Shown: positions 1,379 to 61,970 of the stretch, one piece after another
Layout of the letters: every line of letters starts with the position of its first letter
How positions within the stretch are numbered: position 1 is the first letter of the stretch
DNA from: Paragordius varius
Taxonomy: Eukaryota; Animalia; Nematomorpha
DNA: 64,000 nucleotides
Direction of reading: 5' to 3'
Assembly: GCA_964247055.1 (NCBI GenBank)
Contig: OZ176059.1
Coordinates: 372,001 to 436,000 of the forward strand
Translations under genes and position numbers: made by a program
The notes under the pieces: model-generated
The model's input: only the letters and a program-made list of their open reading frames with translations
What the model was told of the DNA's origin: nothing
Databases searched by the model: none

Positions 1379-2848
1379 CCATTTCCCAGTCTAAATAAAC
1401 GTTTTCCCAGTCAATCGAAACATTTTCCCAGTCAATCGAAACGTTTTCCCAGTCAATCGAAACGTTTTCCCAGTCAATCGAAACATTTTCCCAATCAATC
1501 GAAACGTTTTCCCAATCAATCGAAACGATTTCCCAGTCAATCGAAACATTTTCCCAGTCAATAAAAACATTTTCCCAATCAATAAAAACTTTTTCCCAGT
1601 CAATAAAAACGGTTTTATTTTTGATGATAAATATCAAAACAAGACATAAAATTAACTTTTAACCATTATCAGCGTAATATTAGGATATTATTTTTCATGA
1701 AAAAACAATTATTGAATGACAATTTTCCAAGTATATTCCAATGGACAATCATTACTTATTCTTTAAAAGTTATATTTTTTGTAATTTGAGATGTTTATAA
1801 GATAATATTTTTTATTTTATTGATGGTTCGCATTAATATTTGCCCAACGCTTCAACACAATTTTAAAAAGTCAGGTTTTTCCATAAAAATACTGTCGGAA
1901 AAAATATCTAATTTAAAAAATATTTAATAAGATATTTGACTACTAGAGGGGTGTCCTACCAAAAGACTTCGCGGGCCGCATTACTCAAAAAGCACGGTGT
2001 TCCGCATTTGATATATTTCATAAATAATTTTTCGATTAGATATAAGACTGCAAAATACAAAAATTTAACAATTTTTTTTAATTTGTTACCAATTTAATAG
2101 ACTCATTCAGAGTAATTGCGTAAGGAATATGAATATTACTAAGATTTTGTGGGCATATTTTTGCATATGGATTTCTAAATTTTTAGTGGGCCGCACAAAG
2201 ATACTTGGCACTTCGCGTTGGGCACCCTATGAACCAAATGATAAATTTTATAAAATTAGGGTAAAATTTATGTTTAAGATCCAATATGAAGTGTTAAATG
2301 ACCTTTGAGATAAAAATGGTATATTATTAATATTTCATCCGTAACTCTAGATTTTGTAAGTGCCGCATATAATGCGAACCATCAATAAAATAAAAAAATA
2401 TTAACTTATAAACATCTCAAATTACAAAAAATATAACTTTTAAAGAATAAGTAATGATTGTCCATTGGAATATACTTGGAAAATTGTCATTCAATAATTG
2501 TTTTTTCATGAAAAATAATATCCTAATATTACGCTGATAATGGTTAAAAGTTAATTTTATGTCTTGTTTTGATATTTATCATCAAAAATAAAACCGTTTT
2601 TATTGACTGGGAAAAAGTTTTTATTGATTGGGAAAATGTTTTTATTGACTGGGAAAATGTTTCGATTGACTGGAAAAATGTTTCGATTGATTGGGAAAAC
2701 GTTTTGATTGACTGGGAAAATGTTTTGATTGACTGGGAAAACGTTTCGATTGATTGGGAAAACGTTTCGATAGACTGGGAAAACGTTTCGATTGACTGGG
2801 AAAATGTTTCGATTGACTGGGAAAACGTTTATTTAGACTGGGAAATGG
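1379..2848. mobile_element. Foldback-like non-autonomous DNA transposon, family A copy 1 (~460-bp TIRs with 21-bp tandem units)
   Basis: Flanked by TA; ends are CCATTTCCCAGTCTAAAT and ATTTAGACTGGGAAATGG. Each arm has ~11-12 units of CCCAGTCAATCGAAACGTTTT. Arms are ~1379-1835 and ~2370-2848; the interior is non-coding. Confidence 0.9.
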
Positions 2849-3054
2849 TATATTTAAATAAAAATGGCGTCCAGGTAGTTTTATACGGAATTTTTTTTCA
2901 AAACTAAATTTTATTTAGATATTTTGGTGTATTTATATAATTTTTATTAGGATAGAAGCAATATTGAAGTACCGCTTTTTTGAGAGGATTTTTAAAAATT
3001 TTAACTTATAAATTGTCTGGGGTATTTTGATACCCCAAAGAATCGAAATGTATA

Positions 3055-4482
3055 CCATTTCCCAGTCTAAATAAACGTTTTCCCAGTCAATCGAAACATT
3101 TTCCCAATCAAACAAAACGTTTTCCCAGTCAATCGAAACGTTTTCCCAGTCAATCGAAACATTTTCCCAGTCAATCGAAACGTTTTCTCAGTCAATCGAA
3201 ACATTTTCCCAGTCAATAAAAACATTTTCCCAATCAATAAAAACGTTTTCCCAGTCAATAAAAACGGTTTTATTTTTGATGATAAATATCAAAACAAGAT
3301 ATAAAAATAACTTTTAACCATTATCATCGTAATATTAGGATATTATTTTTTATAAAAACACAATTATTATATGACAATTCTAAATATATTCCAGTGCACA
3401 ATCATTAATGACTTATTCTTTAAAAATTATATTTTTGGAATTTGAGATGTTTTTAAGATAAGATTTTTTATTTTATCGATGGTTCGCATCAATATCTGTG
3501 GCTAAATTATAAAATCTATAGTTACGGATTAAATAATAAAATTTATAAAAATATACCATTTTTATCTGAAAGGTCATTTAACACCTCCTATTGGATCTTA
3601 AACATAAATTTTACCCTAATTTTAATATTTATCATTTGGTTTATCGGGTGCACAACGCGGCCTGCCGAGTATCTTTGTGCGGCCAGCTAAAAATTTAGAA
3701 ATCCATAAAATCACAAAATCTTAGTAATTTTCATATTTCTTACGCAATTATAATAAATGAGTCTGTTAAATTTGTAACAAATTAAAAAAAATTGTTATAT
3801 TTTTGTATTTTAAAGTATTACGTCTAATCGAAAAATTATTTATGAAATATATCGAACGGAACGCTGTGCTTTTTGAGTAATGCGGCCCGCAAAGCCATTT
3901 GGTTAGACACCACTGTTTTAGTCAAATATCTTTTTACTTAATATTTTTAAATTTATCGAAAAAAATTTTTGTTTAGAATTTTTTTCCGACAGTATTCTAA
4001 TGGAAAAACTTGAAATGTTTAAAAACTGTTTTGAAGCGTTCGGCAAATATTAATGCGAACCATTAATAAAAAATCTTATCTTAAAAACATCTCAAATTCC
4101 AAAAATATAATTTTTAAAGAATAAGTCATTGATGATTGTGCACTGGAATATATTTAGAATTGTCATATAATAATTGTGTTTTTATAAAAAATAATATCCT
4201 AATATTACGATGATAATGGTTAAAAGTTATTTTTATATCTTGTTTTGATATTTATCATCAAAAATAAAACCGTTTTTATTGACTGGGAAAACGTTTTTAT
4301 TGATTGGGAAAATGTTTTTATTGACTGGGAAAATGTTTCGATTGACTGAGAAAACGTTTCGATTGACTGGGAAAATGTTTCGATTGACTGGGAAAACGTT
4401 TCGATTGACTGGGAAAACGTTTTGATTGATTGGGAAAATGTTTCGATTGACTGAGAAAACGTTTATTTAGACTGGGAAATGG
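3055..4482. mobile_element. Family A copy 2 (opposite orientation to copy 1)
   Basis: Same termini and TA flanks; its interior is the reverse complement of the copy 1 interior. Confidence 0.9.
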
Positions 4483-7400: not shown

Positions 7401-7609
7401 AAGCACCGATATTATTTCGAGGCGTGGAAACAGTTTACAAACGCTTTAAGATATTATAAAAATACTTTTTCTATATAATTCAGTAATTCTGAACATTACT
7501 GCGTTAGTAAAAACACAATATATAATTAACATATATTTTAAGACGAACTAAATCGAAATTCTGAGGTGATAGAAATGTTCAGCACCATGCAAAAATAATG
7601 CTTTAATAA

Positions 7610-15884: not shown

Positions 15885-18800
15885 CTGGGATGCCTTTGGG
15901 AATATATTTATTATATAAATGAATACTTGTTGGTTAACCGATATGGTACTGTTCATACGACTGATTTATTGCATGTGTGGGGAATTCACGTTTCAATACA
16001 CGCGGTGAGCTGCAAGAATGGTATATATAGATGTAATAAAAGGATGCTTTTGTTGAAAGTTTTAGAAACTTTGAGAACAATTTAGATAAGGCTTTATATG
16101 AATTTGATACTTTATCCTTCAATTCAAACGAAATGATGAAAGTTGTCAATCATTTAAATAATTTACTCACAAATGAACAAAGTGAGAAAGTTTTTTCCCA
16201 AATCCAAGATTTAAACACCATTAAAGGGCGAATGTTTGAAGTTAAAAAAGCTATGATTGAGGCTTTGAATTGGGATCGATTGGTAGCACAATTTGACGTT
16301 ACAGTTAAAAATTTGGGGGATATGCTTTCTGAGCCATCAAAATCTAATTCAAACATTATTTTTGATCAAATGAAGTTATGCATAGATCAAACCAACAAAG
16401 TAGAGGCGAGTTTGGTAAATTTATAGTTCTTAATATATAAAATCTAAAAATCATTTTGGTATATGGGTATATATATTGCACAAAAACGCAGTATAAAATA
16501 TAAAAACTTTAAGCTTGGTTTTTTCTGTATGTAATTTATATGATTAAAGATGTAAAATATATCATATACTGTCATACCAATTTCATATTTACACTGTGTA
16601 ATCTAAAACGATAAGCAAATTCAAAATCAATACCTCGTCCCATCTTAAAATTTTTGGGTTATTTTTATTTGGGTTTTTCTCACAAAATTGTTTTCTTTAT
16701 ATAATTAGATTTACGTCTTGTCCGTATAATTTCAAATCAAATATATATTTTTACTCTACATTTATTTTTATGATTATAACAATAAAGCACATTTTATCAT
16801 GTATGCCAACTTATACGGAGAAAAGGGAACACTATCAAACACTTAAACAACGTATATATGATATGGTATGGAACAATTTAACTCAACATATATGTAAGGA
16901 TTTGAAAACTAATCAATTATCCAACATAAAATCTATGGGTAAATTTTTTAATTATATATATATAGCATTTACAGTTTAAATTCACCCTCGAACAATTCGA
17001 AATCACTCTTGAACAATTCAAATTTACCCTTGAACAATTCAAATTCTTAAACAATTCGAATTTACCCTTGAACAATTCGAATTCACCCTTTAACAATTTA
17101 AATTCACTCTTAAACTATTAAAAACCCCTGAACATTTTTATTCACCGTAAAAATAAATTATGTGTTTTCGGGCGGTTAATATAACTTATCATTAATGAGA
17201 AATATATCTTTATGGCATAGTCTATTATTTGTCGGTTTTATATTAATAACGTAATTTCATTTTTTAAAAATATTTAAAAAATATAGGTAATTATTAATCT
17301 TAAAAAACACATTTATTTTAGGGTGAATTTGAATTGTTTAAGGGGGAATTTAAATTCGAGAGTGTATTTGAACTGTAAATGGTATAATATATATATACCG
17401 AAACATATATCTTTTTTAAGATTGAAAAATAGTAAAAATGTTGAAATTAAAATTTAACTACGGAGACAAAACGTAAAAATATATAAAGATGACATATATA
17501 TTTTTTCTAAAAGACAACCAACCCCATACTTTTATAAATGTTTAATTTTTTTAAAATAAAATAAAATTAGTGTGATTGTTTAAAATTGTAAAGTACGAAC
17601 AGGGATGTGAATTAATAACACAATCCATTATGTATATATTTTATGATTGTAATTAAATAAATTTTATTGGATAAATTAGGCTTATTTTTTTAAAAAAAGT
17701 GTATGATGTTGTCTCTTTAAAAAAACAATATCGTTCTGTTTTTATTTTTAAATTTTGTCCGTAGTTTTTATTCAAAAGTTGGTCATACTTAAAAATTAAG
17801 GGGGGGGGGGTTAAAAAGCATGGCCGACTTTAGAATACACTAAAAATGGTTTGTCTTTAAGTTTTTACTATGTAATACATTTTAACTTATCCAAAAGTAA
17901 TTTTATATATTATGTAATTTAAATGTTGAAAAGAATATGATCTGGAAGGGAATCGAAAAAAATTGGTATCGAATTCAATATTATCCATTTTTTTGGGCGG
18001 GGGAGGGGGGGGGTATAAAATCGATTTTCAAAAACTAAAATTATTTTAACAAAATGTAAAAATAAAAAGTATAAAATATTTCCATCAAAAGAAAACTATA
18101 TTTTTTTTAAAAAACGCGGTTTTCCAAAATTTTTATGCAACCTGCGAGAAATAAATTGTAATACAAAATTTAAAAACGTAATCCAAGTTTTTAAATTAAT
18201 TTTCTGATTGGCAATAATAGCAAAAAAATGTTAAAATAAATGGTAGTTTTAAAAGACTAATGTTTTAAATTTTATTAAATACATGTTAATGCATACATAT
18301 ATATACTTTTTGAATGCAGCCCGTGAAGCCATTTATGTTGGACAGCCCTATTTTAAACCATTACCTTTTTATGTTAAAAAATATGGAATAGAGAATATAA
18401 AATGGTATCCAATTTGTAATATGATATCAAGGTTCAAAAAAGTATGATATAATGCCTTTTGAAGAAAAAATGTGGCGTTTGCTTGACAGAATGCGCGTTT
18501 GTTACAAAAATATCGTTTGCTTGAAATAATGTTGCCTTTTACTGAAAATGTCTTTTGAAAGAATGTTGCTATAGACTAAAAAAACATAGTCTTTTTTTTT
18601 AAAAAAATTGTTGCGTTTACCCGAAAAATTTGCGATTACTAGCAAAAATGTTGCGTTTGCTTGAAAAAATGTTACGTTTGTTCGAATAAAGTTGCGTTTA
18701 TTGAAAAAGTGTTGCGTTTAAAAAAATGTCGTCTTTGCAAAAAAATGTTATGTTCACGAAAAAACTGATGCGTTTACTTGAAAACATTGATTTTTTTGAC

Positions 18801-21800
18801 TGGAAAAATGTTTTCTTTGTTTGAAAAAAGTTGCGTTTTCTCAAGAAATGTTGTGTTTGCTTGTTAAACATGTTACTTTTGACTGAAAAATTTTATGATA
18901 TTACTTGTCTCTAATTCTAATACTATAATAGATAAGAACCATATATATATATGTTTATAGATCATGAACTTTGGTTACTAAGCTTGAAATGTTTGAAACA
19001 AGTCTGCAGTGAGGTAGTAAAAGGACTTGAACACGAAGAAGATGGATCATTATTGATTATATCCATATTGGATTATATACGGGTATATTTTACATTCACA
19101 ATAAAATGGCTTACTTTTCTATATATATACCATTTCCAAATCTAAATTCACCCTTGAACAATTCAAATTGACTCTTATATTTTTTAAAAAATAAAATTTT
19201 GTTTTTAATTAAAATAATACTGAAAAAATAATAAACTATGCCATAAAGATATATTTTATATTAATAAAGAGTCATTTTAGTTTGAAAACATGTTTAATTA
19301 TTTCAGGGAGAATTTAGATTGTTCGAGTGTGAATTTCAACTGTAAATGGTATATATATATATATATATAAGTCACACACATTTATTTTAAAATGTAAAAG
19401 GTAATTGTTGTTAGTTTTCATATTCTATTGTATCAATCTATAAGGAGTCAATACCATATATTTTGAAAAAAAATATTTTTTTTTCGTATAATAATTATAA
19501 TATTAATAATGCCGATTGTTATTGGAAAAATACAGTAAAAATTAAAAGTATACGGACGGACTAAACGTGAAAAAAAACGCATAAAGACAAATATTAATTT
19601 TTTTAAAAAACAACAACACTATCCATACTTTGGTAGTTAACCTTAATTTTTTCCTAATAAATATATAATTTTTAATTATAATTAATTATGAAAAATGTGT
19701 AATTGATTGATTGTGTTACCAATATACTTCTCTAATTGCAATTTTAAACAGTGAAATATCATAAGAGCAAAAAAATTACATCTAAAAAGTATATGGGGTT
19801 GTCTTTGAAGAAAAAAAATATTTTTCTTTATATTTTTACTTTTTGTCCGTATATAATTTCAATTTTTACTATATATACCATTTACGTAATTCACCCTTAA
19901 ACAATTCAAATTCACTCTTGAACAATTCAAATTCATTCTAAAAATAGATTATGTGTTTTCGGGCTAATATAACTCATCATCATTATAATATATTCTTATG
20001 GCATAGTTTATTTTTTCAGTATTATATTGATTTTTGAACAAAATTTCATCATTAAAAGCATATTAAAAAATATAGGTAATTGTTAATTTTAAAAAAACAC
20101 ATACTTTATTTTAGGGTGAAATTGAATTGTTCAAGGGGGAATTTGAATTGTTCAAGGGTGATTTTGAACTGTAAATGGTATCACCCTAAAATAAATTATG
20201 TGTTTTCTAAGATTATATATTAGCTATATTTTTTATATTTATAAAAAAAGAAATTTTGTATGTAATCAAAATAATACTGAAAAAATAATAAACTTTGCCA
20301 TAAAAATATATTTAATTTTAATGATGAGTTATATTAGACCGAAGTTTCATAATTTATTTTTACGGTGATATTGAATTGTTCAAGGGTGAATTTGAATTGT
20401 TCAAGGGTGAATTTAAACTATAAATGGTATATAAATATTGTATTATAGATGATTGCAATCGAATATTTGAGTCAATTGATAGCAAACAACACAGAAAATT
20501 TTAATGTAAAGATATCTAAAGTGGGAGAATCAAATACAAGCAATCAAGATAATTTGATACAACTTACAAATTACATTACCAAGTTGTGGCAAGACTTTTT
20601 GGTTTTTGACAAATTTATACATTTTAGTTATTTTATAATTGAGACTGTCTTTTATCATTTTATCTTAACTTTAACAATAAAAAATTTTGTGCAGGGTGGG
20701 GGAAGGAAGGTGGAAAATATATTATTAATCAATATATACCATTTACACTCCAAATTTTTCCCTTGAACTCGAATTCACCCCCTATAAATTTTTATGTGTT
20801 TTTTAATTACCTATAATTTTTGCATAATATTTTTTAAAAAATGAAATTTCTTTTATAAATTAGCATAATATTAAAAAAAGTAAACTATTTAGTGATAAAA
20901 ATATATTTTATAATAATGATGTTTATATTAGCCCCCCGAAAACTAAATTAAATTTTAGGGTATTTGAATTCTTCAAGGGTGCATTTGAGTTGTTCGAGGG
21001 TGAAATTGAATTGTTCAAGAGTGAATTTGAGTTGTTTAAGGGGCAATTCGAGTTGTAAATGGTATATTTTAAAAAAATAGAGTTAAATCAACAGTATAGA
21101 GACTAATATTTGTTAGTTTTATACGGCAAAAATTTTTTTGTATTAATTTCAAATATAGGTAGCAAAGAGCATTGTTTTATTGGTTAATAATACTATAAAA
21201 AGCGAAAAAATTATCATGAGCCAATAATATCTTTGCTATATATTGTGCTATCTAGAGCTATAAGTTATGAAAAAACTATCAAAATACAGTGATTAAATAT
21301 ATACATTGCCAGTTTAATATATAATTTACATTTTTTCAACCAAAAGCAACATTTTTCCAATTTGATTGAAAAAATATGTTGCGTTTGCTTGAAAAAAAAG
21401 TTGTTGCGTTTGCTTGGAAGCTTTTGCTTAAATAATGTTGTTTTGCTTGAAAAATATTGGGTTTTAAAAAATGTTGCGTTTGCTTGGAAGCTTTTGCTTA
21501 AATAATGTTGTTTTGCTTGAAAAATATTGGGTTTTAAAAAATGTTGCGTTATCTTGAAAAAATGTCGCGTTTGCTTTAAAAAATGTTTTCTTTTGCTTTA
21601 AAAAAAGTTCCGTTTGCTTAAAAAAATTGTTGCGTTTGCTTGAAAAAAAAGTTGTTGCGTTTGCTTAGAAGCTTTTGCTTAAATAATGTTGTTTTGCTTG
21701 AAATATTGGGTTTTCTCAAAAAATGTTGCGTTGAAAAAAATGTCGCGTTTGCTTGAAAAAAATGTTGCCCTTGCTTGAAAAAATGTTGTCTTTTGCTTGA

Positions 21801-35948: not shown

Positions 35949-35980
<32 letters not shown>

Positions 35981-40700: not shown

Positions 40701-43159
40701 CAACAGCACCGATAATATTTCAGTGAGATATGGACCAGTTTAACAAGTAATGGTCTCGGATGGCATGAGAAAGCATAGATGAAAGGAAACTCGTCGTAAC
40801 ACCCATCGCATTTATTTTTTAACAAATGAATTTCGTTTATATTAACTTTAAAAAATACTAGACTATACCATGAAGAATTCATAAGAGTTTTATCAGCCGC
40901 CCAAAAACGCATAATTTATTTTTAAGGTAAATTTGAATTGTTCAATGGTAATGAATTGTTCAAGGGTAAATTTGACTTGTTTAAGAGTACATTTAAATTG
41001 TTCAAGAGTGAATTTGAATTGGTTAAGGATGAATTTAAATTGTTTTGCTGTTAATTTGAATTAACATTTATATTCATTGTTACAGATTGGTCAGTATTTA
41101 TTAATGCTACCCCAATATTTGGATAATTACAGTTTTTCAACTCCATCACTCCTCGCTACCAAAAATGACAATAATGATAATTATTCATTACCAACAACTT
41201 CCAATTACGGTGATTGGGGCAAGAATGCTTTATTAAATGTTTACCGATACTATTACCTGTATTTCGAGGAGGAGGGTAAAAGAATTTTTTTTATATTTAT
41301 GATTGATTCGTTGGTTATTCCCAGTATGGTTATCGTTTAGAAAAAAATATTTGTCTTTAAATTTTTACGTGTTGTCCGTATAATATCAAATTTTACTGTA
41401 ATATTTGTGGTATAAGTATAAATTTCATTTATAATAAGACACAACGTTTCTAATATGCGGCCTATTAAAAATATTTGAAAAATAAAATATAAAAATTGCC
41501 TAATTTGAAAAAAAATATTAGTAAAATTGATATATTATTATCCCATACAAAATGTTAATGAGTTAGTTTTCTATATTTTAGCAACAAAAACTAATTCTTA
41601 TAATATACCATTTGCACTTCAAGCGTGTCCTCAAACTTTTTAAGTTGGTTTTTACATTTCAAATTGGTCCTTAAAATTTCTTATTTTGGATTTAACCATA
41701 AATTTAGCATATTCTTCATATTATAATACTTTTTGTCGGAGGACCAAGTTGAAGTGCTAATAGACACTCTTAAAGTGCAAAAGTTATTATGATTAATATT
41801 TATTTACTACATTTTTAATTTTATTTTTTGCCAATAAAATATTTTTTACAGTAATATTCATTTTAATGCATCTCACCGCACTTCTTGGGTCTATAATCGA
41901 CCCGCGAAGCCATTTATGTTGCAAAAAATATATATTTTTTATCATTTTTATTATAAGGTTAAAGCTGTATATTTGCAAATATATATATATATATATATTA
42001 TTTCGATTTAGAACATGTTAACCATAATAATGAAAACAAACATGTCACATCCAACAATAAGAAAAATAATGATAATGAATTTCCTTATGAAACAGTGGCT
42101 GAATATTGGTTAAATAACCTAATAAGTTACATAAGTCATGAGTTAATGCATTTAATTACAAACCGATTGCATGTGATTGAACCAACTACTCTCCATCAAA
42201 TTCATTGTGATTTAGGTGGGCATTATAATATAATATACCATTTACAGTTCGAATTCACGCTTGAACAATTTAAATTCACCCTTGAACATTTTCAAATTCA
42301 CCCTAAAATAAATTATGTCCTTTTTTAAATTTTAAATTACCTATATTTTTTAATATTTTAAAAATAAAATGAAATATCGTTTAAAATTAATATAGTACTG
42401 AAAAAATAATAAACTATTCCATGAAAATATATTTCATATTAATGATGAGTTATAACTGTCAAGGGGGAATTCGAATTGTTCAAGGGTGAATTTGAATTGT
42501 TCAAGGGTGATTTTGAATTTTAAATGGTATATATATTTTTTATGATATTTTTATAAAACACCTGCCACTTGGCTAACCTCTCTACTTTTTACATTGTTTT
42601 GTTACATTAAAAATTAAAATATACCATTTACAATTAAAATTCACCCTTGAACAATTCAAATTTAACCTAAAAATAAAATAGGTTTTGGGCTAATATAACT
42701 CATCATTTATAAGATAGTTTATTATTTTTTTTATATTATTTTAATTTTGAACGGAATTTCATTTTTTATAATATAAAAAATATAATAATTTTTAATCTTA
42801 AAAAACACATATTTTATTTTAGGTATATATATATATATATATGCTTTTGATAAATATATCTTATCCTTACCATTTTTTAACTTGCAGATTATTTTGCCAA
42901 TTTAACCCAAGATTTGGGTTTTGAACAAAGCGTAAGGGACATTGATAATTTTACCCTGTTAATCCAATTAACTCAATCTGGATCACGGATGGAATATATG
43001 AAATGTCTTCAACAATACTATGGTCTTGTTATAACAACAAGTGATGAAACTACGCTAGATCAATCACTTTTAAGTGGTGAGGAAAGCGCTATTAAATTTC
43101 CACCAAATACTGCCAAACAGTTTATAACTTTGTTTGAACGTATTCAATGGACATCTTAA
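15885..43159 (+). CDS. COG7: Conserved oligomeric Golgi complex subunit 7, ~18 exons, ~1070 aa; start-codon exon not resolved
   Basis: GT-AG exons in continuous frame: 15885-16004, 16043-16414, 16788-16938, 18961-19082, 20449-20601, 21905-22340, 22737-22864, 23940-24065, 30581-30740, 32394-32556, 36257-36441, 37395-37534, 37971-38001, 38037-38062, 38183-38410, 41086-41275, 42012-42215, 42888-43159 (3207 nt). Segments recognised against human COG7 from memory: IKGRMFEVKKAMIEALNWDRL ([21 protein letters not shown]), PSEYMTEIGQYLLMLPQYLD ([20 protein letters not shown]), AEYWLNNL (ADNWLGSI), QIHCDLDYFANL (QLATDIDYLINV). The two micro-exons are less certain. Confidence 0.88.
18440..18890. repeat. 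Family C 21-bp tandem array (AAAAATGTTGCGTTTGCTTGA)
   Basis: About 20 degenerate units with a 21-bp period, in COG7 intron 16939-18960. Confidence 0.8.
21302..21870. mobile_element. Family C element (21-bp array ending in AAATGG|TA)
   Basis: The array includes an internal ~60-bp block duplication. The right end reads aaaaatggta; the left end is a degenerate tacattgccagtttaa. Confidence 0.7.
23617..23903. mobile_element. Tc1/mariner-type MITE family M1 (TA|CAGTAAAAATTGAAATTATACGGAC TIR); representative of >15 copies
   Basis: ~290-bp palindromes with CAGT...ACTG ends and TA flanks. Other copies at ~4504-4790, 10525-10790, 17455-17765, 19532-19872, 30130-30458, 31375-31640, 32634-32929, 36464-36775, 37078-37371, 52310-52570, 58938-59222, 59833-60105 and 60645-60922, plus several halves. 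Confidence 0.85.
24325..24516. mobile_element. MITE family M2 (CAGTATGCATTTTAATGG TIR, ACAGTAGTGTATGG core)
   Basis: ~200-bp palindrome; a second copy is at ~35601-35808 and a third is embedded at ~22910-23085. Confidence 0.75.
24612..27640 (-). mobile_element. Degenerate Ty3/Gypsy LTR retrotransposon, 5'-truncated (gag CCHC remnant, PR, RT, RNase H, partial IN, PPT, 3' LTR)
   Basis: RT WATPTVNVLKPNGELRICSDF...IDLKNAHLQ...RMPFGLATAPIIFQ (26286-26690). RNase H ASDLG..YSTIEKELKAILFALRKFHSFVYGRKFILLTDHLPL (25459-26286). Zinc-knuckle remnant ~27230-27330. Order is PR-RT-RH-IN. The LTR (TG...CA) at 24612-24825 is adjacent to a purine tract. Frameshifts are present. Confidence 0.9.
27643..29425 (+). 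mobile_element. Second Gypsy copy of the same family (RNase H-IN-PPT-3' LTR), inverted relative to the first
   Basis: RNase H at 27650-27990; IN His-His region RIIIPKPLQKEVVRYLHSGH at 28055-28366; PPT ACAAGGGG then LTR starting TGTTAG at 29276. Stops and frameshifts are present. Confidence 0.9.
29530..29905 (-). mobile_element. Third Gypsy fragment (integrase core and C-terminal pieces)
   Basis: Reverse complement of parts of 28500-28760 and 29100-29160. Confidence 0.7.
31811..32118. mobile_element. Family B MITE (CCATTTACAGTTCAAATTCACCC TIR, 21-bp unit TTCAAATTCACCCTTGAACAA); representative of ~19 copies
   Basis: Palindromic 0.2-0.45 kb elements. Other copies are at ~16965-17382, 19130-19349, 19878-20178, 20181-20427, 20739-21062, 22368-22660, 24091-24288, 31070-31353, 32135-32367, 33339-33570, 34153-34970, 35981-36238, 38440-38734, 40905-41060, 42238-42527, 42624-42822, 53401-53721 and 58170-58450. 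Confidence 0.85.
32558..32595. repeat. (TA)n microsatellite; representative of many
   Basis: Similar runs at ~13155, 30325, 30530, 32928, 35948, 36790, 37672, 47525, 58815 and 60612, many abutting MITE ends. Confidence 0.9.
34375..34919. mobile_element. TIR element (TGTCATATCCTCTATTTTGGTTG ends) nested in a family B copy
   Basis: Imperfect inverted arms of ~70-90 bp at 34375-34445 and 34830-34919; B-family halves lie on both sides. Confidence 0.65.
37745..37875. mobile_element. Small palindromic family C element
   Basis: Starts CCATTTTTCAAGCAAACGCAAC, followed by inverted units ATGTTGTCTTTGCTTGAAAAA. Confidence 0.65.
39232..39715 (-). mobile_element. Gypsy RT N-terminal fragment (left arm of an inverted pair)
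   Basis: Reverse complement of 40335-40805; encodes a decayed TWATPTVNVLK.NGELRICSD RT segment of the same family as 26286-26690. Confidence 0.85.
39960..40805 (+). mobile_element. Gypsy remnant: gag CCHC knuckle and RT N-terminal fragment
   Basis: Decayed CNR.GR.H..SKCPAW...NKC.KPNHFPKMC at ~39985-40090; RT segment at 40335-40800 with stops. Confidence 0.85.
41608..41775. mobile_element. Family D MITE (CCATTTGCACTTCAAG terminus; TTCAAGTTGGTCCTTGAACAC unit)
   Basis: Starts TA|CCATTTGCACTTCAAG; the inverted end GGACCAAGTTGAAGTG...TTAAAGTGCAA lies near 41740-41780. Confidence 0.6.
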
Positions 43160-44021: not shown

Positions 44022-45427
44022 CCATTTCCCAGTCTAAATAAACGTTTTCCCAGTCAATCGAAACATTTTCCCAATCAATCGAAACGTTTTCCCAGTCAAT
44101 CGAAACGTTTTCCCAGTCAATCGAAACATTTTCCCAGTCAATCGAAACGTTTTCCCAGTCAATCGAAACATTTTCCCAATCAATAAAAACGTTTTCCCAG
44201 TCAATAAAAACGGTTTTATTTTTTATGATAAATATTAAAATAAGAATATAAAAATATATGGAGATAATTTTTAATTAAAAACACAATCAAATGATGATTT
44301 TTCCAAGTATATTCCAGTGCACAATCATTAATGACTTATTCTTTAAATGTTATATTTTTGGAATTTAAGTTAAGATAATATTATTTATTTTATCGATGGT
44401 TCGCATTAATATATGCGGCTAAAAAAATCTATAGTTACGGAGGAATTAATAAAATTTATAAAAATATACCATTTTTATCACAAAGGTCATTTAACACTTT
44501 ATATTGGATCTTAAACATAAATTTTAGGCTAATTTTATAATATTTAACATTTGGTTCAGAGGGGGCCTAAGGCGGCCTTCCAAGTACCTTTGTGCGGGTC
44601 GCAAAAAATTTGGAAAACCATATGCAAAAATATGCTTACAAAATCTTAGTAATATTCATATTTCTTACGCAATTATTATGAATGAATTTATTAAATTGGT
44701 AATGAATTAAAAAAAAATGTTATATTGTGTTTGTATTTTACAGTCTTATTAATCAAATTATGTGAATGCCTGTATATATATTTTGAATGCGGAACCGTGT
44801 GCTTTTTGATTTAAAAATGCGGCCCGCGAAGGCATTTAGTTACACCCTTGTTTTAGTCAAATCTCCTTTTTATTAAATATTTTTAAATCAAAAACATTTT
44901 TATCAAAAATATTTTTGTTTAGATATTTTTTCCGACAGTATTTTATCGACAAACCGGACATATTTAAAAACTATTTGAAGCGTTCCGCAAATATTAATGC
45001 GAACCATCGATAAAATAAAAAATATTATCTTAACTCAAATTCCAAAAATATAACATTTAAAGAATAGGTCATTAATGATTGTGCACTGGAATATACTTGG
45101 AAAAATTGTCATTTGATTGTGTTTTTAATTAAAAATTATCTCCATATATTACGCTAATAATGGTTAAAAGTTGTTTTTATATTCTTATTTTAATATTTAT
45201 CATCAAAAATAATACCGTTTTTATTGACTGGGAAAACGTTTTTATTGATCGGGAAAATGTTTTTATTGACTGGGAAAATGTTTCGATTGACTGGGAAAAC
45301 GTTTTGATTGATTGGGAAAATGTTTCGATAGACTGGAAAAACGTTTAGATTGACTGGTAAAACGTTTCGATTGATTGGGAAAATGTTTCGATTGACTGGG
45401 AAAACGTTTATTTAGACTGGGAAATGG
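44022..45427. mobile_element. Family A copy 3
   Basis: Same termini, TA flanks, 21-bp arrays and interior as copy 2. Confidence 0.9.
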
Positions 45428-50500: not shown

Positions 50501-53500
50501 TTATTATTGGCTAAAAATGTTAAAAAGTAAAAAAAATAACTATAAGCCAATTATACTGCCCTTTGCTGCATATGCTATTTGGCAATAAAAAATAACTTTC
50601 TAGCAATGTATACATATTCATACTGTAATTAAAAGTATAAAATTTGTACTTCATTAATATTTTGCCCTGTATTGTTTATTATTGCCTCCCATGTGACAAA
50701 TAAATCTTTTTACCGACTATTGTTTTATTAGTTAATATTAAGCGTGATGTGTGTTTTATATGCTTAGGCGGTAAAACTATTGAAATGGCCTTTGGTTTTT
50801 TTCGTTTTTTAATTTGTATTTTTTTAACAAAAATATATGATTGCGAAAAAAATAAAAATTGTACAACAATTCACGGTTAGTAACGATTGATCGATAATAT
50901 TTTTTTTTCAAATATTACAAGTTTTACAGGTTGTTTTATTCTCAATTATAAATTTTGATAGTAGACACTTAATTTGATAATTTGTAAGCAGGTATCTATG
51001 CCAGGATTGGTATGTTTAAGAACTATAGCTAGAAAAATGTTTTACCATAGCCTAAAACAATTTAAACTGATAATTTTAGCACTATCCTATTATGAACCTA
51101 AGCTGACTCTTTATCATTATAGAGAATAAAATAATGTTTCATATTTGATCCTTTTTGTGTAAAAAACTATTAATACTAACAATAATTGCCACAAAGTCAC
51201 CCAATATATTTGCAGATGACCCATGTGTGAATTAAAAGATGGTTTTTTGAACATTTCTCATTGACTTGCCTTAACTTATCTAGGAATTCAGGCGAATTTT
51301 CATTTAGCTTGAGCTATTATCACATGCATTTTAATAGTTATTTGTATAATCTTATAAATCTATAATTATAATAATAATAAAATTACTATTGCCATAAGAA
51401 AAGATAAGAGGCAAAATTACATTGCGACGCGACAAAATAGGAATTTCGTAGATTTTAGCGGTGTGTGTCTCTTTTATGTTCGCTTTCACTAAACTGTCAT
51501 AGGCTCATCATCCAAAAATCATGATTATATCTTCCTGATGGAAATCATATTAATAAATTATGGTTTTTTATTACCATTTTTTTGAGCCTAGAGACTGGTT
51601 ATTAATTCGTTTGTGTTTTTTGGTAGGAAAGAATTTCATCAGTCAATTTTATCACACAATGGATATAATATGGCACAGTAAAGGCGGCATTTTTATCTGT
51701 ACTACATCTATCTATTTCGCTTCGCTATAGCTCTCTCTTTTAATAATTTATTGTAAGGTTTTATGCAAAGCGAACAGCTTATGTATAAAAGATCTCATAG
51801 GGGAGACTCTATGAGTGCAAAAAATATTGAAAGGTGGAAAAGTTTTAGAATTTATATAAAATCTAAAAACTCTTTTTCTCCCCAATAAGCCGAAAAATGG
51901 CCAATTACCAATTACATCCATTGTTTTTGTATGATCGCGATGAACTATTTATGCATGTTAATAAGTAAAAATTAGTATTATTACTCAGAGTGTCATTTTT
52001 AAAAACCCAAATAGTGAGATGTCACTTTTTTAAATAAATTATTTAGATTTAGACAAAATGGTGAAGCAGTTTATTAATAGAAATTACCTTTTTTGTTCAT
52101 ATTGTAATTTAAAAATATTATTCTAAATTTATGTCTTGCAATTGCAGTGATTGCTTTTAGGTTAGGGGCAATGTAAGCGAGGTTAAAATTTTGTTGGGAG
52201 CATTAAATAATATCTGTTACCACCAAATTATATAAATACTATAGATTTAGTTTTTTAAATCCCATAATGTGTCTGAAATTCATGCCTTTTTTAAATTTTG
52301 GCATTAAAATTTATAGTAAAAATCGAAATTATACGGACAAAGATAAAAATGTAAAGAAATTTTTTTGCAAAATACAACCATACTTTATAAATCTTGATTT
52401 TTCCAAACATAAAATATTGTTAAAAATTCCAAAATATATAAAGATTTATATTGGTTCAAATAATTTATATGTGAAAAATTAAAGTTTTAAAAAGTATAGT
52501 TGTCGTTTAGAAAAAAATATTTGTCTTTATATTTTTACGTTTTGTCTGTATAATTTGAACTTTTACTGTATTTACTTAACATTTCCTTACAGAATTAACA
52601 CTAGACCATCCTGAAACCTTAAGTCTTAAGTGATAATCATTTCGATGCTATGTTTGCAAATTCAACCACACAAGCAAAAGTAATTCATATGCTTCCAGTT
52701 TTATAACCAAAAAATATTTCGGATAGCTTTCAGGTTTACTCGAAACAAAAAGTTGCTTAAAATCAATAACGATTTTCAATCATTTAATTCACTCGAAAAT
52801 AAAATTTATATTTTACTCATACAAATTTTATATCAGTTATCGCAATTTGGAAAATAATTTTGCGGCAAGCAGTTTGAGATGAGGAATTTAGGAATTAAAA
52901 TTTTAAAATTTCTAAAATTATTTTTGTGTATAACCTCCCCAACATACATGCCTACTTAATTAAATTAAATATTAGAATTTAAAATTATCCCTTTGGTCAA
53001 TGGATGTATGCAATAAGAAAAGTTTTGAATTTAGAAAGCTAAAAAAATTTGTTTTTAATACTCCTTAAATTTAACCAAATATGTCGAGGACATATCGAAT
53101 ATATGTGTTGTAAAAAAAGAGTATTGGTTTAAACTACATTTTATCCTCCATGTATCTTTATCTATATATCTATCTATATACTTTTATTTCTTAGCTTAGG
53201 AAAAAGTCATAAATGTTTACAAAGGTCAATAGTCTTCTTTCTCTTGCAAATAACTTTTTATACAAATGCTAAAGCGAAAAAAAACTTTACATACTTACTT
53301 GTTTAAATATAAACCAGGAATAAATTATATATGATACGGTCCGAAAGAAATGGTATCTGCTGTTTTGGATTTTTGGATATATATATATATATATATATTG
53401 CCATTCACAATTCAAATTCACCTTTGAAAAATTTAAATGCACCCTCTAATAATTCAAATTCACCCTAAAATAAATTATGTGTTTTTCTAGGATTAAAAAC

Positions 53501-54652
53501 TAATATTTTTTAATATTTTTTAAAATAGGAAATTCTGTTTAAAATTATTATATAATGCTGGAAAAATAATAAACTATGTCGTAAAAATGTATTTTATTTT
53601 ATTATGAGTTATATTGGCCCAAAAACACATAATTTATTTTAGGGTAAATTTAAAATTTTTGAGGGTGAATTCGAATTGGAGGGAATTTGATTGTTTAAGT
53701 GTGAATTCGAATTGTAAATGCTATAACTTATATTAAGGCATAATAGTTATTTTGAACGGTAAAACCGGTAATTAATTCATAATATAAAGCATGTGGATAT
53801 ATAATTGGAAAAAAGGTTGAGGATATCTATTTGATCCGATACATATAGAAAACCGTGGGCCCATTTAATATCATTTTTTAAAATCTTAAACTTGAGTAAT
53901 TTATGTGATTACTATTTTTTTAAGCGATAGTTTGACATCCCACCAACAATCTTTTTTAATCCGAGCTTTGTTCAAACTTAAATCCGCAGTAATATTTTGG
54001 ACTTTCCCATTCGTTCTTGGCTGTTTTCTGTAAGTCTCCTAAACCCGCCTTGTTTGTTAATCCTGATATGTGTATCATATTAAAAACACACATGGCAAGG
54101 CTTCTAAGCAATTTGCAATTTTTATTAACTCATAACTTATTGCTTCTGAATAATTAAACCTGCGGTGTGTGGTATATCGCTTTAAACATGTGGCCACACA
54201 GATACTACCAGACAAAAGACACTTTTATAAGTTCAATAACAGAATGATTTTCGTCCGCATATTAATATTTCCTTGATGTGTGCGAATATCAAAACCTTTT
54301 GGTGGAAGCATCTACTTGCTGTACTATCGTTGTATAATTTTTAAGTTAGCAGTAACATCTAGATTGATATTTAAATGGCGGGTAAATTATTTTGCCATAT
54401 TCTTGTCAAAATTTTCATCTATTCTGAAACTGAATTAGAGAGTTGTTTAATCGATTAACTTCTGAATCCAAAAATGGCTTCATTCGGTTTATTCGTTGTG
54501 CATAACATTTTATTTTTGCATAAATTTTGTTATGGTCTGGTCGATTTATATTGTATGCTAGCTGGCCCTGTCACGCTTCGCTGTGACCTACTCCGACAAA
54601 TTTTTTTAATAATTTAAAATAGAGGTAAGGGGGATAAAAAAATAATGAAAAA

Positions 54653-57750: not shown

Positions 57751-60604
57751 TTAGGTTCTAAAAATTATTTTTGTACACTTGATTTTTTTAAAATGGCATT
57801 TTATTGGGGGGAGCGGGTAAAAGAGGGCCTAAATTAAAAAAGCTAGCCGATGTTCGGCGTAAATCAATAAAAAAATCATATTTGAAATTGAATGGTCCAA
57901 CACTTTTTCAGGAAAATTGTCTCAAAGACACAATTGTGGACTTCTGTTTTCAAAAAAACCGTTTTTTACACGGGGTAGGTTCTGGGGGCCTAAAAAAGGG
58001 CGAAGCTATTGTCAGGGCATTCATTAATGATTTTATTTTTCAACATTTGGATTTGAATGGGTCTATCGGTTTTTCATAAATAGATCACCAATTCCATTTT
58101 ATAAATATATAGATCTCCATTTAAATTATGTCGATAAGTTTTTAATATGGATACATCAATTTATATATAATTTACATTTCAAATTAACACTTGAACAATT
58201 CAAATTCACCCTTAAATAAAACAATTCTAATTTATCCTAAAATAAATTATGTGTTTTTTAGGATTAAAAATTACCTTTATTTTTTATATTTTTTTAAAAA
58301 ATTAGATTTTATTTAAAATTAACATAATACTGAAATTATACTATGCCATAAAGATATATTTCATTTAAATGATGAGTTATATTAATCGGCCGAAAAATTA
58401 TTTTTTAAGGTGAATTTGAATTGTTGAAGGGTGAATTCGAATGTAAATGGTATATATATACAGTTTGGCCCTAGTTTTTTTGACAATCAACACACATCAA
58501 ATGAACAAACATTTAAATTTTGGCGAATTTCTTCTAGAGCGCACACTTTATTTCGAATCATGATAGATACGCTGTAAAAAAAAGTTTAGTTTAAAAAAAT
58601 TACATTATCAAAATTATTTTATTAAAAAAATGAGATAAATTTAAATGATCAAAGTAATGTTTTAAATAAAAATAATTCATTTTGTTCATAATTTAAAATA
58701 AATATTTTGGGCTAATCGAAAAAAATTCACTTTAGCGGATTCTAAAAATAAGAGACCTTTGCTTGCATATAATATGAAAATAATTAACATTTATTATAGA
58801 TATATTGTTTGTAATATATATATATATATATATGTTACAAAAATTGGAACGAAACTTTAGCTTCCATCACAAGTTGATATAATAATCACTAATTTTAAAA
58901 TAATTTTTTAATTTAGCGCAATTATTAAAAAAAAATACAGTAAAAACTGAAATTATACTGACAAAACGAAAAAATATAAAGACAAACATTTTTTTCTAAA
59001 AGACATCCTACTTTTTTTTGGAATATAAACCATTGTTTATAATTGCAAAGTATGAAATAGAGATGTATATTGGTAACGCAATCAATTATATATTTTGCAA
59101 TTTTAATTAAATAGTTTATAAGGGAAAATTTAAGGTTTAAGAAAACTTGGTTGTCTTTTGAAAATACAAGTTTGCCTTTATATTTTTAGGTTTTGTTTGT
59201 GTAAATTTAATATTTATTGTATTTTTATCGAAAATCGAAAAATTATGTATGAAATCTGATTCATTCTTTAATATTCCTTTATTAATATTTTTGTATCAAC
59301 TCTATATATAAAAATGTAATAGTTTTAAAATTATATTAATAACTGCAAAATTCGGAAATTATAAATTTTTACAATCTGACCTGTTATTTTTATTAGATGG
59401 GTCAAAATGAAATTATAAAGCCAAAACGTAAAAACTAAGAGTTGAAGATTTTTTTATAAAGACAAATATATACATATATTTTCATATTTAAATAATCCAT
59501 CGTTTTAGGAAAAGAATACTTAAGTAAATTATATGATATCTTTTACAATGATTTTAATTTGGGTCCTATAAATCAAGAAAAAAGTTACATACCTTTATCA
59601 AAACATACATCGATGTAAATTGCTTCTTTTCAGGTTTATTTTAATCACACTCTGTTCTGTCAGATGTTAGAGAAAATTATGATCATAGCTTAACTTCTTT
59701 AATCCAGCGCGCGTTTTCCCATACCACTTTTTTTTGTGGCCTTCCATTTTTCCTATCATGAGCTGGTAAAAATTCCTTGGTTCTGTTAAGAAAGTTTTAT
59801 TTTAAAAAGATAGAGATCCGAACATGGATATGTACCGTAAAATAAAAAATATACGGACAAAATGTAAAAAAAGACATATATTTTTATCTAGGATAGCCAC
59901 ACTTTTTTAAACCTTAATTATTCCTACATAAGCTATTTAGTTACAAAAAGATATAGAATTGATTGTGCTAATAATATCACACTTTATAATTTAAAACAAT
60001 GAGTTATATTTGAATAAATAATTAAAAAAAATGGTTGTCTATTAAATAAAATTTTTGTCTGTATATTTTTACGTTTTCTCCGTAAAATTTCGGTTTTTAC
60101 TGTATGTTTCAGAATTTCGGTGTTTTTAATTCCTTACAATCGATTTACTATCTCCTACTCGGTTATTTCAAAAGCAGTTTAATTGTCTTTTTTGTTTAAC
60201 CTTTTTAATGTCTAATTGTCTGAAACGATGCTTACTCAAGATATATAGCTGACCTAAAATTTAATTTATACATTGTATATATAGAGATTAAAGTAAAATA
60301 TTTTTTTTTCCAAAGTGAGCCATACTTTTTTAAACATTAATATTTTCTAAACTATTTTTTCTAAATGTCCATTTCATATTTAATGACTATTGAATCAAGC
60401 TCCAAACGCGAGAGCGGTAGCGGTTTTATAATAAAATATATTTGTCTTCATATGTTTACTCTTTTTTCATATCATTTAAATTTTTGAAATTTGCCTTTCA
60501 CCCTTCTCTAATGTCCAACTCTGTGCTACGTAAAGCATACTACTTTGGATGAGAGATATGACTGTCATATATTGTTTATCAATCTCAATTAATTTATACA
60601 CCTG

Positions 60605-60942: not shown

Positions 60943-61271
60943 GATCGCCGTTTTTTGGGTGTTGCCGAAGAAAGTAGTGGCTTACAACCTGGACGACGGA
61001 GAAAAAGTTCCATTTTTGCGGCTGCGTCCGGTCGAGCCCGTCGTAAACGGGAACATGAACGCCGTCGAGCCCGTAAAGGCGATCATCAACAGGGAGGTGG
61101 TGGTGTTGTTGTTGATGATACCTCATCCGAACAATTAATGCAAAGGGCAGAAACTGTTACACCGCACATTTACGTTAATCCCATGTTGGATGGGGATGGG
61201 GATGTGGAGACAGCCCTCACCCACCCGGCACGGAAAACGCCATCCATGTTTGACATTGCGAGAATGGCTGA
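60943..61271 (+). CDS. Internal coding exon of an unidentified gene (basic, Arg-rich; RRKSSIF motif)
   Basis: GC-rich island bounded by a tag| acceptor (60941-42) and a |gtaagt donor (61272). Open for 109 codons: DRRFLGVAEESSGLQPGRRRKSSIFAAASGRARRKREHERRRARKG...RKTPSMFDIARMA. It could instead be a terminal exon ending at TAA 61273-75. Neighbouring exons not found. Confidence 0.55.
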
Positions 61272-61387
61272 GTAAGTATCAACATATTTTATTGTAGTAA
61301 ATCTTTATTATGTGTGTTGTGTAGTTTAAACGGGTGAAGTTGGTATATTAACATTTCAATATTGTCTTATGGGTATAATTCTAAACA

Positions 61388-61970
61388 ATTGCACTTCAAG
61401 AGTATCCTTTAATATTTCAAGTCCTTGAACACTTAAAGCTTTAAGTTGGTCCTTGAAAACTTAAAGTTGACTTCAAGTTGGTCCTTGAACACTTTAAGTT
61501 AGTCCTTAAAATTTTTAAATATTTAACAATAATTTTTGCATTTATTATTTTTTAACTTATTTCTCTTTATTTATTATATATTTAATCATTTAAATTATTT
61601 TTATTCAAGAAACTTTTTTTGTTTTTAACTAATTCAATTTAACAAAAGTATTAAATTTTAAATGTCTTTAATGAAAATTTGTAATAATAACACACAAAAC
61701 TTATATATTTTAAATTACATGTTAAAACCATAAAAATGAAGATATACGGTTTCTGAATGATCGAAAGTCGGTAGTGATTTAAAGTTCATGTTAAATAAAA
61801 AATTTGGTAAAAATGAGAAAGATGAATAATACACGATTTGATTGATAATTAAAAACAGAACAAAAAAGTTAAAGGTTAACTTGAAGTTTACAAGGAGCAA
61901 ATAGTGTTCAAAGACCAACTTAAAATGTTCAAGCACCAACTAGAAGTGTTAAATGAAGTATAACTTTGCA
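61388..61970. mobile_element. Family D element, longer copy
   Basis: Left arm has TTGCACTTCAAG plus several GTTGGTCCTTGAA units ~21 bp apart; the right arm has inverted GACCAACTT/CACCAACT units. Confidence 0.6.

What the first reader, a model, noticed from the sequence alone, without database searches (positions are those of the whole stretch)
1379..61970. One foldback transposon system: shared TA|CCATTT terminus and 21-bp subterminal units in four sequence flavours
Seen: families A, B, C and D look unrelated at first, but all begin TA|CCATTT (A: CCATTTCCCAGTCTAAAT; B: CCATTTACAGTTCAAAT; C: CCATTTTTCAAGC at 37745; D: CCATTTGCACTTCAAG at 41608). All carry tandem units of 21 bp. Hand alignment gives A vs C 15/21 and B vs D 16/21 identity, and A and B share CCC...CAAT(T)CGAA. 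Known: foldback elements (Drosophila FB, Galileo) have long TIRs with tandem subunits; 21 bp is two turns of B-DNA. Inference: one or a few related transposases mobilise all four families, and the 21-bp period is conserved because it phases binding sites on one helix face while the unit sequence drifts. I recognise no described family with this combination. No transposase ORF is in the window.
Basis: partly seen in the sequence, partly recalled or inferred. Interest (0 to 1): 0.78.

Follow-up and report, generated by a model that had tools for sequence, protein, structure and literature searches.

The report
Related TA-flanked MITE/foldback transposon families
About a sixth of this AT-rich eukaryotic window consists of small, non-coding DNA transposons whose arms are stacks of ~21-bp repeats ending in the same TA|CCATTT tip; this is a familiar kind of mobile-element group, of interest mainly to transposon specialists.

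Summary
The repeats are real. Family A (3 copies, about 1.4 kb, 420-444-nt arms) is a true foldback element. Family B (about 17 loci, 200-420 bp) is an ordinary MITE. C (3 loci) and D (2 loci) are older and decayed. TA|CCATTT ends are solid for A (6/6) and B (18/24 exact). They are weak for C (2/3, one not TA-flanked) and D (1/4). The 21-bp period is strict only in A and B. Units fall into two lineages, {A,C} and {B,D}. All cross-pairs are at chance, so the claimed A-B unit motif is not supported. The only link between the lineages is the tip, plus one B copy with an A-like end. In every family the terminus is that family's own unit shortened by one base. Flanking direct repeats are only TA or TATA, which excludes FB/MULE, Galileo/P and hAT-type duplications. 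The 300 longest ORFs contain no transposase. The best reading is non-autonomous cut-and-paste elements moved in trans, probably by a Tc1/mariner-type enzyme. This superfamily call is inferred from the TA flanks alone. No copies were found outside the window, and the organism is unknown. Helical phasing is untested and is not needed to explain the data.

The parts
1379..2848 (.). Family A copy 1: foldback element of 1470 bp. Arms of 444 nt carry 11-12 units of 21 bp. Flanked TATA|...|TATA.
   Evidence: (I1)
3055..4482 (.). Family A copy 2: 1428 bp, arms 422 nt and 99% complementary, 10 units per arm. Folds as one long hairpin.
   Evidence: (I2)
44022..45427 (.). Family A copy 3: 1406 bp, 9-10 units per arm.
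   Evidence: (I6, I12, I23)
16965..17382 (.). Family B copy B1: MITE with about 7 units on the left arm and 2-3 on the right. The first base of the left end is mutated (GCATTT).
19130..19349 (.). B2: its left end is A-like (CCATTTCCAAATCTAAAT) and its right end is B-type. It lies inside a (TA)n tract.
19878..20178 (.). B3: complete copy. It abuts the end of a family E MITE on the left and B4 on the right.
20181..20427 (.). B4: copy lacking its left arm. The right end reads CCATTTATAG.
20739..21062 (.). B5: complete copy, flanked TATA|...|TATA.
22368..22662 (.). B6: left end CCATTTAAAG with flank TG. The right end is decayed.
24088..24275 (.). B17: fragment (left arm and part of the core).
31070..31351 (.). 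B7: complete copy, flanks TA / TG.
31811..32118 (.). B8: complete copy, flanks AA / TA. The right arm has 3.9 units at 95% identity.
33339..33564 (.). B9: the left end is intact and the right tip is missing.
34127..34318 (.). B18: weak internal fragment.
35980..36238 (.). B10: complete copy. The left end reads TCATTT, and the flanks are TA / AA.
38438..38734 (.). B11: the left tip is missing and the right end reads CCATTAACAC.
40816..41062 (.). B12: fragment with a decayed right-arm array of about 6 units.
42238..42527 (.). B13: complete copy, flanked TATA|...|TATA.
42624..42826 (.). B14: left arm and core. The right arm is replaced by (TA)n.
53401..53721 (.). B15: decayed complete copy with ends CCATTC and GCATTT.
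58168..58450 (.). B16: the left tip lacks CC and the right end is intact.
18459..18893 (.). C1: one-armed, decayed array with period 20-22. It contains A-like units, and its right tip GACTGAAAAATTT|TA resembles the A tip.
21329..21870 (.). C2: short left arm (2 units) and long right arm (about 25 units), with TA on both sides. The right tip is CCATTTTTTTAAGC. It includes an exact 70-bp duplication.
37745..37872 (.). C3: small foldback remnant. The left tip CCATTTTTCAAGC is preceded by GT, and the right tip is decayed.
41608..41784 (.). D1: 177-bp element with left tip CCATTTGCAC, right tip ACTTTTGCAC and TA on both sides.
61385..61956 (.). D2: decayed 572-bp element with tips ACAATTGCAC and TCATTTAACAC. 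Its arms carry irregular 21/32-bp units.

Best explanation
A-D are non-autonomous cut-and-paste (class II) DNA transposons. A is a 1.4-kb foldback family. B, C and D are MITE-like families.

Shown:
- Each arm is a head-to-tail stack of a unit of about 21 bp.
- The outermost unit is a one-base-shorter variant that starts CCATTT and abuts TA, usually TATA or a (TA)n tract.
- Units belong to two unrelated lineages, {A,C} and {B,D}. In both, the tip has been changed from the internal unit (ACATTT(T) or CCCTTG(A)) to the same hexamer.

Inferred:
- The tip is what the transposase needs for recognition and cleavage. The families are therefore served in trans by one transposase, or by closely related ones, encoded elsewhere in the genome.
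- That enzyme is most likely of the IS630-Tc1-mariner/pogo group, because these are the eukaryotic elements that duplicate TA.
- The inner units are extra copies of the terminal binding site, multiplied and lost by slippage or unequal exchange. The 21-bp period is inherited within each lineage and need not be selected for helical phasing.
- Arms of a single A copy are kept nearly identical by intra-element repair or conversion.
For: - Dispersed copies have defined ends. TACCATTT is enriched fourfold, and the excess is fully accounted for by the families.
- 12 of 15 complete copies have TA on both sides (9 have TATA), and none has a 7-9-nt duplication apart from TA-microsatellite contexts.
- An alignment of 37 ends shows a common TATA|CCATTT.
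- In every family the terminus is the family's own unit minus 1 nt (P<0.001 for A, B and C; P=0.006 for D).
- There are two unit lineages: A-C P=0.004, B-D P<0.001, and cross-pairs at chance. A aligns with array C1 in register over 112 bp.
- The left end of B2 is A-like while the rest of that copy is B.
- There is no coding capacity.
- A2 folds into a stem of about 420 bp at -537 kcal/mol.
- Unit number differs between copies and between arms, and higher-order repeats of 63 bp and 70 bp occur.
- A arms are 96-99% alike within a copy, against 91-93% between copies.
- Literature: TA is the Tc1/mariner duplication (PMC5199201). Many MITE families can share TIRs with a smaller set of transposase families, and TA-flanked foldback MITEs exist (PMC3814204).
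Against: - No transposase was found, so the superfamily rests on the flanks alone.
- No empty site is available. TA cannot be separated from TATA (4 bp) or from a shifted AT.
- Apart from the hexamer, termini are not significantly similar (A-B P=0.07, others P of 0.2 or more).
- C and D rest on 3 and 2 decayed loci, and CCATTT is seen at only 2/3 and 1/4 of their ends.
- Tc1/mariner ends usually start CAGT or similar, as family E in this same window does, and they rarely carry long tandem arrays.
- All searches outside the window were blank.
Confidence: 0.55

Rival explanations
1. There are two independent transposon lineages, {A,C} and {B,D}. Each has its own autonomous partner and a transposase that binds its own 21-bp unit. 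CCATTT next to TA is only a superfamily-level cleavage motif, like CACTA in En/Spm elements, and not a sign of one shared enzyme.
For: Units of the two lineages are at chance similarity. Termini beyond the hexamer are not significantly alike. Family-specific subterminal binding repeats combined with a conserved tip are the rule in CACTA, hAT and P elements (established knowledge).
Against: The left end of B2 carries an A-type tip on a B body, which suggests the tips are interchangeable. Both lineages altered different internal unit sequences to reach the same hexamer, which argues for a very similar requirement at the tip.
Confidence: 0.3
2. The duplication is not TA. Either it is a 4-bp TATA, or the elements start one base further out and duplicate AT. 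In that case they belong to another superfamily: a 4-bp-TSD group such as Sola (recalled from memory, unverified), or ISL2EU of the PHIS group.
For: 23 of 30 A/B ends read TATA|. Position -4 is T in 13/15 ends, against 3/8 in the control family E. 9 of 15 complete copies have TATA on both sides. ISL2EU duplicates AT (PMC4482050).
Against: B3, C2 and D1 match for TA only and not for TATA. The ISL2EU target is A|AT|T, whereas the base before AT here would be T. A TA duplication with a preference for ATATATAT targets, as known for Sleeping Beauty (own knowledge), gives the same flanks.
Confidence: 0.12
3. These are not mobile elements. They are dispersed hairpin-forming mini-satellite arrays spread by recombination or segmental duplication.
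For: Arrays change by whole units, and one-armed arrays exist (C1, B12).
Against: About 25 loci have the same sharp ends and TA flanks in unrelated contexts. B has a conserved unique core. The flanks of A1, A2 and A3 are unrelated beyond a few bases.
Confidence: 0.03

Closest known systems
Stowaway-like / Tc1-mariner-derived MITE groups that share TIRs (rice Stowaway-Osmar; Aedes Gnome/Elf/Goblin-Ozma)
   Same: They are short, AT-rich and non-coding, with TA flanks. Several families with different interiors share the tip and are mobilised in trans or by cross-mobilisation (PMC3814204; PMC5199201).
   Different: Here the arms are strict tandem stacks of 2-12 units of 21 bp and the tip is CCATTT. 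Usual tips are CTCCCTCC (Stowaway) or CAGT (Tc1/pogo). No matching transposase is known.
TA-flanked palindromic/foldback MITEs (PALTA_CE families of C. elegans, Mirza of Culex, CeleTc2/Tc5 derivatives)
   Same: Almost the whole element is one inverted repeat, and some of these families are TA-flanked. This resembles family A (list in PMC3814204).
   Different: I could not check whether those families carry tandem sub-repeats or a CCATTT tip. No sequence comparison was possible.
Drosophila Foldback (FB) and Galileo/Kepler/Newton
   Same: Long arms are built from tandem sub-repeats, copy-to-copy structure is variable, and arms within a copy are homogenised (Galileo: PMC3573991).
   Different: Their duplications are 9 bp (FB, MULE-related) and 7 bp (Galileo, P superfamily) (own knowledge). 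Here only TA/TATA is repeated.
IR-DR Tc1-like elements (Sleeping Beauty, Minos, Paris, Bari3)
   Same: They duplicate TA, and the transposase-binding site at the tip is repeated further inside each arm (own knowledge).
   Different: Those have 2-3 spaced sites in an arm of about 230 bp and they encode the transposase. Here up to 12 abutting sites occur and there is no gene.
En/Spm (CACTA), Ac/Ds, P: conserved tip plus family-specific subterminal repeats
   Same: The logic is the same: a short shared cleavage tip and iterated subterminal protein-binding motifs.
   Different: The duplications (3 bp, 8 bp, 8 bp), tips and superfamilies all differ.

Membership tests
Tc1/mariner/pogo (ITm) non-autonomous elements (Stowaway-like MITEs) | TA target-site duplication | tested here: inconclusive
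   12 of 15 complete copies have TA on both sides. However, 23 of 30 ends read TATA and many lie in (TA)n tracts, and no empty site was found.
Tc1/mariner/pogo (ITm) non-autonomous elements (Stowaway-like MITEs) | Terminal inverted repeats, small size, no coding capacity | tested here: met
   There are TIRs in all families. B is 200-420 bp. No Pfam domain is found in 300 ORFs. A, at 1.4 kb, is larger than a typical MITE.
Tc1/mariner/pogo (ITm) non-autonomous elements (Stowaway-like MITEs) | An autonomous DD(E/D) element with matching TIRs in the same genome | not testable with these tools
   Only this window of the genome is available.
Foldback elements sensu Drosophila FB (MULE-related) | Long TIRs made of tandem sub-repeats | tested here: met
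   A has arms of 420-444 nt with 9-12 units of 21 bp. The arms are short in B, C and D.
Foldback elements sensu Drosophila FB (MULE-related) | 9-bp target-site duplication | tested here: not met
   The longest flanking direct repeat is 4 nt for A1, A2, B1, B5, B13 and B16. Longer ones occur only inside TA microsatellites.
Galileo / P superfamily | 7-8-bp target-site duplication | tested here: not met
   Same flank analysis.
ISL2EU (PHIS superfamily) | AT duplication within an A|AT|T target (PMC4482050) | tested here: not met
   If the elements are read as ACCATTT...AAATGGT, the flanks are AT. But the base outside is T in 26 of 30 ends, not A.
piggyBac / Kolobok | TTAA duplication | tested here: not met
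   None of the 37 aligned ends is flanked by TTAA.
hAT / Mutator | 8-bp or 9-bp duplication | tested here: not met

The most novel reading that the evidence does not exclude
One transposase reads only the TA|CCATTT tip together with the 21-bp (two helical turns) spacing of whatever units follow. Unrelated 21-bp arrays could then be recruited as transposon arms simply by evolving the tip. The stacks would act as phase-dependent, largely sequence-independent scaffolds for cooperative transposase assembly. A side reading is that long perfect hairpins of exact 21-nt repeats are diced into one dominant small RNA.
Probability: 0.07. Interest if true: 0.65.

Novelty: new member of a known kind. Interest (0 to 1): 0.3.

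Why it matters
If one enzyme moves all these families, the window gives a compact natural experiment on what a transposase needs at a transposon end. Two unrelated repeat units have both been reshaped into the same 6-bp tip, and up to 12 phased copies of the putative binding site stack behind it. In practice, the families cover 17% of this window and fill the introns of a gene, so they matter for repeat annotation of this genome. Otherwise this is one more case of the well-known pattern of MITE families sharing ends.

Tried and rejected
**Finding more copies or the organism**
- All routes were blank.
- The RT/RNase H ORF gave hits of at most 38% identity.
- Host-gene exon 16040-16423 gave two weak, uninformative hits.
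- The ZNHIT1-like exon found no candidate in the search for homologous proteins.
- Exact scans for a B unit dimer, the A tip and an A unit dimer found nothing in viral, metagenome and prokaryote-genome collections.
- Literal searches for the sequences in the paper library found nothing.
- The Rfam scan and the tRNA scan found nothing.

**Empty-site search inside the window**
- It returned only (TA)n microsatellite matches.

**Other checks**
- Pfam hits to coiled-coil families in ORFs across the A arrays are artefacts. 21 bp equals 7 codons, which produces heptad-like repeats.
- The TACCATTT sites at 330, 18245, 18407, 29041, 38048, 42868, 51572 and 53355 have no arrays or partners, and their number matches chance.
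- The paper by Bao et al. 2009 on Sola/Zator duplications is not held. The Sola alternative therefore rests on memory.
- Exons were searched one by one by reference.
- The window is not human-like: 26% GC with an insect- or invertebrate-style repeat content.
Full report
**Context**

The window is AT-rich eukaryotic DNA: 27% G+C, CpG observed/expected 1.04, no tRNA genes and no Rfam match. It holds few long ORFs. The only protein domains in the 300 longest stop-to-stop ORFs are RT and RNase H of a decayed LTR retroelement. I could not identify the organism. An exon at 9544-9741 matches human ZNHIT1 (E=4.7e-8), and a non-LTR RT tail is present, so an animal is likely. That is inference only. The contig is not human-like.

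**The observation**

Tandem Repeats Finder reports many arrays with a 21-bp period. TACCATTT occurs 34 times against 8.4 expected. Sorting the 34 sites gives 6 A ends, 3 sites inside A centres, 15 B ends, 1 C, 1 D and 8 unrelated sites. The 8 unrelated sites match the chance level.

BLAST of one member of each family against the window gives the following:
- A: 3 full copies.
- B: 17-19 loci.
- C: 3 loci.
- D: 2 loci.

Together A-D cover 11.06 kb, or 17% of the window. A fifth, unrelated MITE family (E, ends TA|CAGTAAAAATTGAAATTATACGGAC) has about 20 loci.

**Family A**

A is a genuine foldback element of 1406-1470 bp. Its arms are 420-444 nt long and 96-99% complementary. Each arm begins with CCATTTCCCAGTCTAAATAA, followed by 9-12 units of ACRTTTTCCCARTCAATMRAA with no indels. 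A2 folds into a single stem of about 420 bp (-537 kcal/mol). The order of unit variants is conserved between copies, so the arrays were inherited whole. Copies are 91-93% alike overall and 85-90% alike in the centre. That is less than the identity between the two arms of one copy.

**Families B, C and D**

- B is an ordinary MITE of 200-420 bp with a conserved unique core. Its arms carry 2-7 units of CAATTCAAATTCACCCTTGAA. The period is strict: identity at lag 21 is 0.62-0.88.
- C has a smeared period of 20-22 bp. It contains an exact 70-bp duplication, and one locus is a one-armed array.
- D has only 2-4 irregular units per arm.

**Ends and flanks**

I aligned 37 ends.
- All 6 A ends read TATA|CCATTT.
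- 18 of 24 B ends have exact CCATTT, and 17 of 24 have TATA.
- C: C2 right and C3 left start CCATTTTT. C3 is preceded by GT, and the C2 left end reads CATTTT.
- D: only the D1 left end is exact.

Among 15 complete copies, the longest exact direct repeat of the flanks is 2 or 4 nt. The exceptions lie inside TA microsatellites. 12 copies have TA on both sides and 9 have TATA. This excludes duplications of 7-9 bp (P/Galileo, FB/MULE, hAT) and TTAA.

It does not separate TA from TATA or from a shifted AT, and no empty site exists in the window. As a control, family E ends show T at position -4 in 3 of 8 cases, against 13 of 15 for A/B. A/B therefore have either a stronger ATATAT target preference or a 4-bp duplication. 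The ISL2EU pattern A|AT|T (PMC4482050) does not fit, because the outer base here is T.

**How the families are related**

*Unit comparisons.* Best ungapped matches over all rotations and both strands are A-C 14/21, B-D 15/21 and A-B 10/21. Null tail probabilities are about 0.04 for 14/21 and about 0.01 for 15/21. For 10/21 the tail is about 0.83, which is the chance level.

I then fixed the orientation as outward to inward and compared three-unit concatemers against shuffles. A-C gives P=0.004 and B-D gives P<0.001. A-B, A-D, B-C and C-D are at chance, with P between 0.73 and 0.95. A also aligns in register with array C1 over 112 bp at 71% identity, and C1 contains A-like units. So there are two unit lineages.

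*Termini.* After the hexamer, nt 7-23 are not significantly alike: A-B P=0.07, the others P of 0.2 or more. The link between the lineages therefore rests on two things:
- The hexamer itself. CCATTT has a frequency of 8.6e-4 per site in the window and about 3e-4 from base composition.
- The left end of B2, which has an A-type tip (CCATTTCCAAATCTAAAT) on a B body.

*Tip versus unit.* In each family the tip is the family's own unit shortened by one base (shuffled-unit P<0.001 for A, B and C, and P=0.006 for D):

| Family | Tip | Own unit |
|---|---|---|
| A | CCATTT-CCCAGTC | ACATTTTCCCAGTC |
| B | CCATTTA-CAGTTCAAATTCA | CCCTTGAACAATTCAAATTCA |
| C | CCATTTTT-CAAGC | ACATTTTTTCAAGC |
| D | CCATTTGCACTTCAAG | CCTTGAACACTTAAAG |

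Two unrelated internal sequences (ACATTT and CCCTTG) thus become the same hexamer at the tip. This is what a shared requirement of the cleaving enzyme would produce.

**Mechanism**

Shown: these are non-coding, dispersed TIR elements with TA(TA) flanks, arms that are stacks of the tip unit, and two unit lineages.

Inferred:
- They are mobilised in trans by a transposase encoded elsewhere.
- That enzyme is most likely of the Tc1/mariner/pogo group, because TA is that group's duplication (PMC5199201).
- The tip unit is the recognition and cleavage site. The inner units are extra sites or by-products of slippage and unequal exchange. Supporting signs are variable unit numbers, 63-bp and 70-bp higher-order repeats, and unequal arms.

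The period is not kept in C and D, and within each lineage it can simply be inherited.

**Comparison with known systems**

- Many MITE families sharing TIRs with fewer transposase families is well documented. Rice has 36 Stowaway families against 25 Osmar families.
- Foldback-type MITEs are also described, including TA-flanked ones such as PALTA_CE and Mirza (PMC3814204).
- Galileo shows long, internally repetitive TIRs but belongs to the P superfamily (PMC3573991).

What is less usual here is the combination of a TA-type flank with long, strictly periodic stacks and a CCATTT tip. Whether these exact families are already in Repbase or Dfam could not be checked.

**Limits**

Everything rests on one 64-kb window. 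Exons of the host genes were searched singly by reference.

**Verdict**

This is a new member of a known kind, of modest interest.

Noticed in passing
window 4502-4793, 17450-17800, 19529-19874, 36470-36776, 37075-37375, 52312-52572, 58934-59223 and other sites: A fifth MITE family (E) has about 20 loci and ends TA|CAGTAAAAATTGAAATTATACGGACAAAACGTAAAAATATAAAGAC. The tip is Tc1/pogo-like (CAGT), there are no 21-bp arrays, and it is unrelated to A-D.
   Followed up: partly
window 1379-2848, 3055-4482, 44022-45427: The two arms of one A copy are 96-99% identical. Different copies are only 91-93% alike, and their centres 85-90%. This suggests intra-element homogenisation (hairpin-templated repair or conversion) or separate master copies.
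   Followed up: partly
window 2314-2321 (-), 3554-3561 (+), 44467-44474 (+): The unique centre of all three A copies holds a third, unpaired TATA|CCATTTTTATC site. It could be the relic of an original end that became internal when the foldback formed. Alternatively it could be chance: about 0.07 such sites are expected per centre.
   Followed up: no
window 9544-9741 (+) and 9996-10211 (+): These look like two exons of a ZNHIT1/Vps71-type zf-HIT gene. The first matches human ZNHIT1 in PDB 8x15_L at E=4.7e-8. The second ends in the start of a HIT zinc finger (Pfam E=0.017).
   Followed up: partly
window 25307-28366: Decayed LTR-retroelement pol pieces (RT, RNase H, integrase-like) are arranged as an inverted duplication with arms 87-93% alike. 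They are broken by stops and frameshifts. I described them only and reconstructed nothing.
   Followed up: partly
window 39300-40750: A second decayed retroelement fragment is present. Its ORFs show gag zinc-knuckle-like and RT-like features. The reading is by eye only.
   Followed up: no
window 7606-7869 (-): This ORF carries the C-terminal tail motif typical of non-LTR (RTE/Jockey-type) reverse transcriptases (…GRRRTRWMDNI…). It has no Pfam hit.
   Followed up: no
window 16040-43156 (+): A long, multi-exon + strand gene has introns packed with B, C, D and E elements. One exon (41065-41337) has a faint COG7 hit (E=0.33). Exon 16040-16423 has almost no relatives in 1.8 billion representative proteins.
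   Followed up: partly
window 1382-1616, 2591-2845, 44025-44217 and other A arrays: Because 21 bp equals 7 codons, ORFs running through the A arrays translate into heptad-like repeats. These give spurious coiled-coil Pfam hits (FlaC_arch, DASH_Duo1, Prefoldin and others).
   Followed up: yes
window 18320-18345, 41895-41925; compare 3880-3900: A short GC-richer motif (CCCGYGAAGCCATTTATGTTG) recurs at two places. It resembles GCGGCCCGCAAAGCCATTTGGTTAG in the A centre and may belong to another repeat family.
   Followed up: no
whole window: CpG observed/expected is 1.04, so there is no CpG depletion. GG/CC is over-represented (1.46-1.48). There are many (TA)n tracts, several of which directly abut B ends.
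   Followed up: partly
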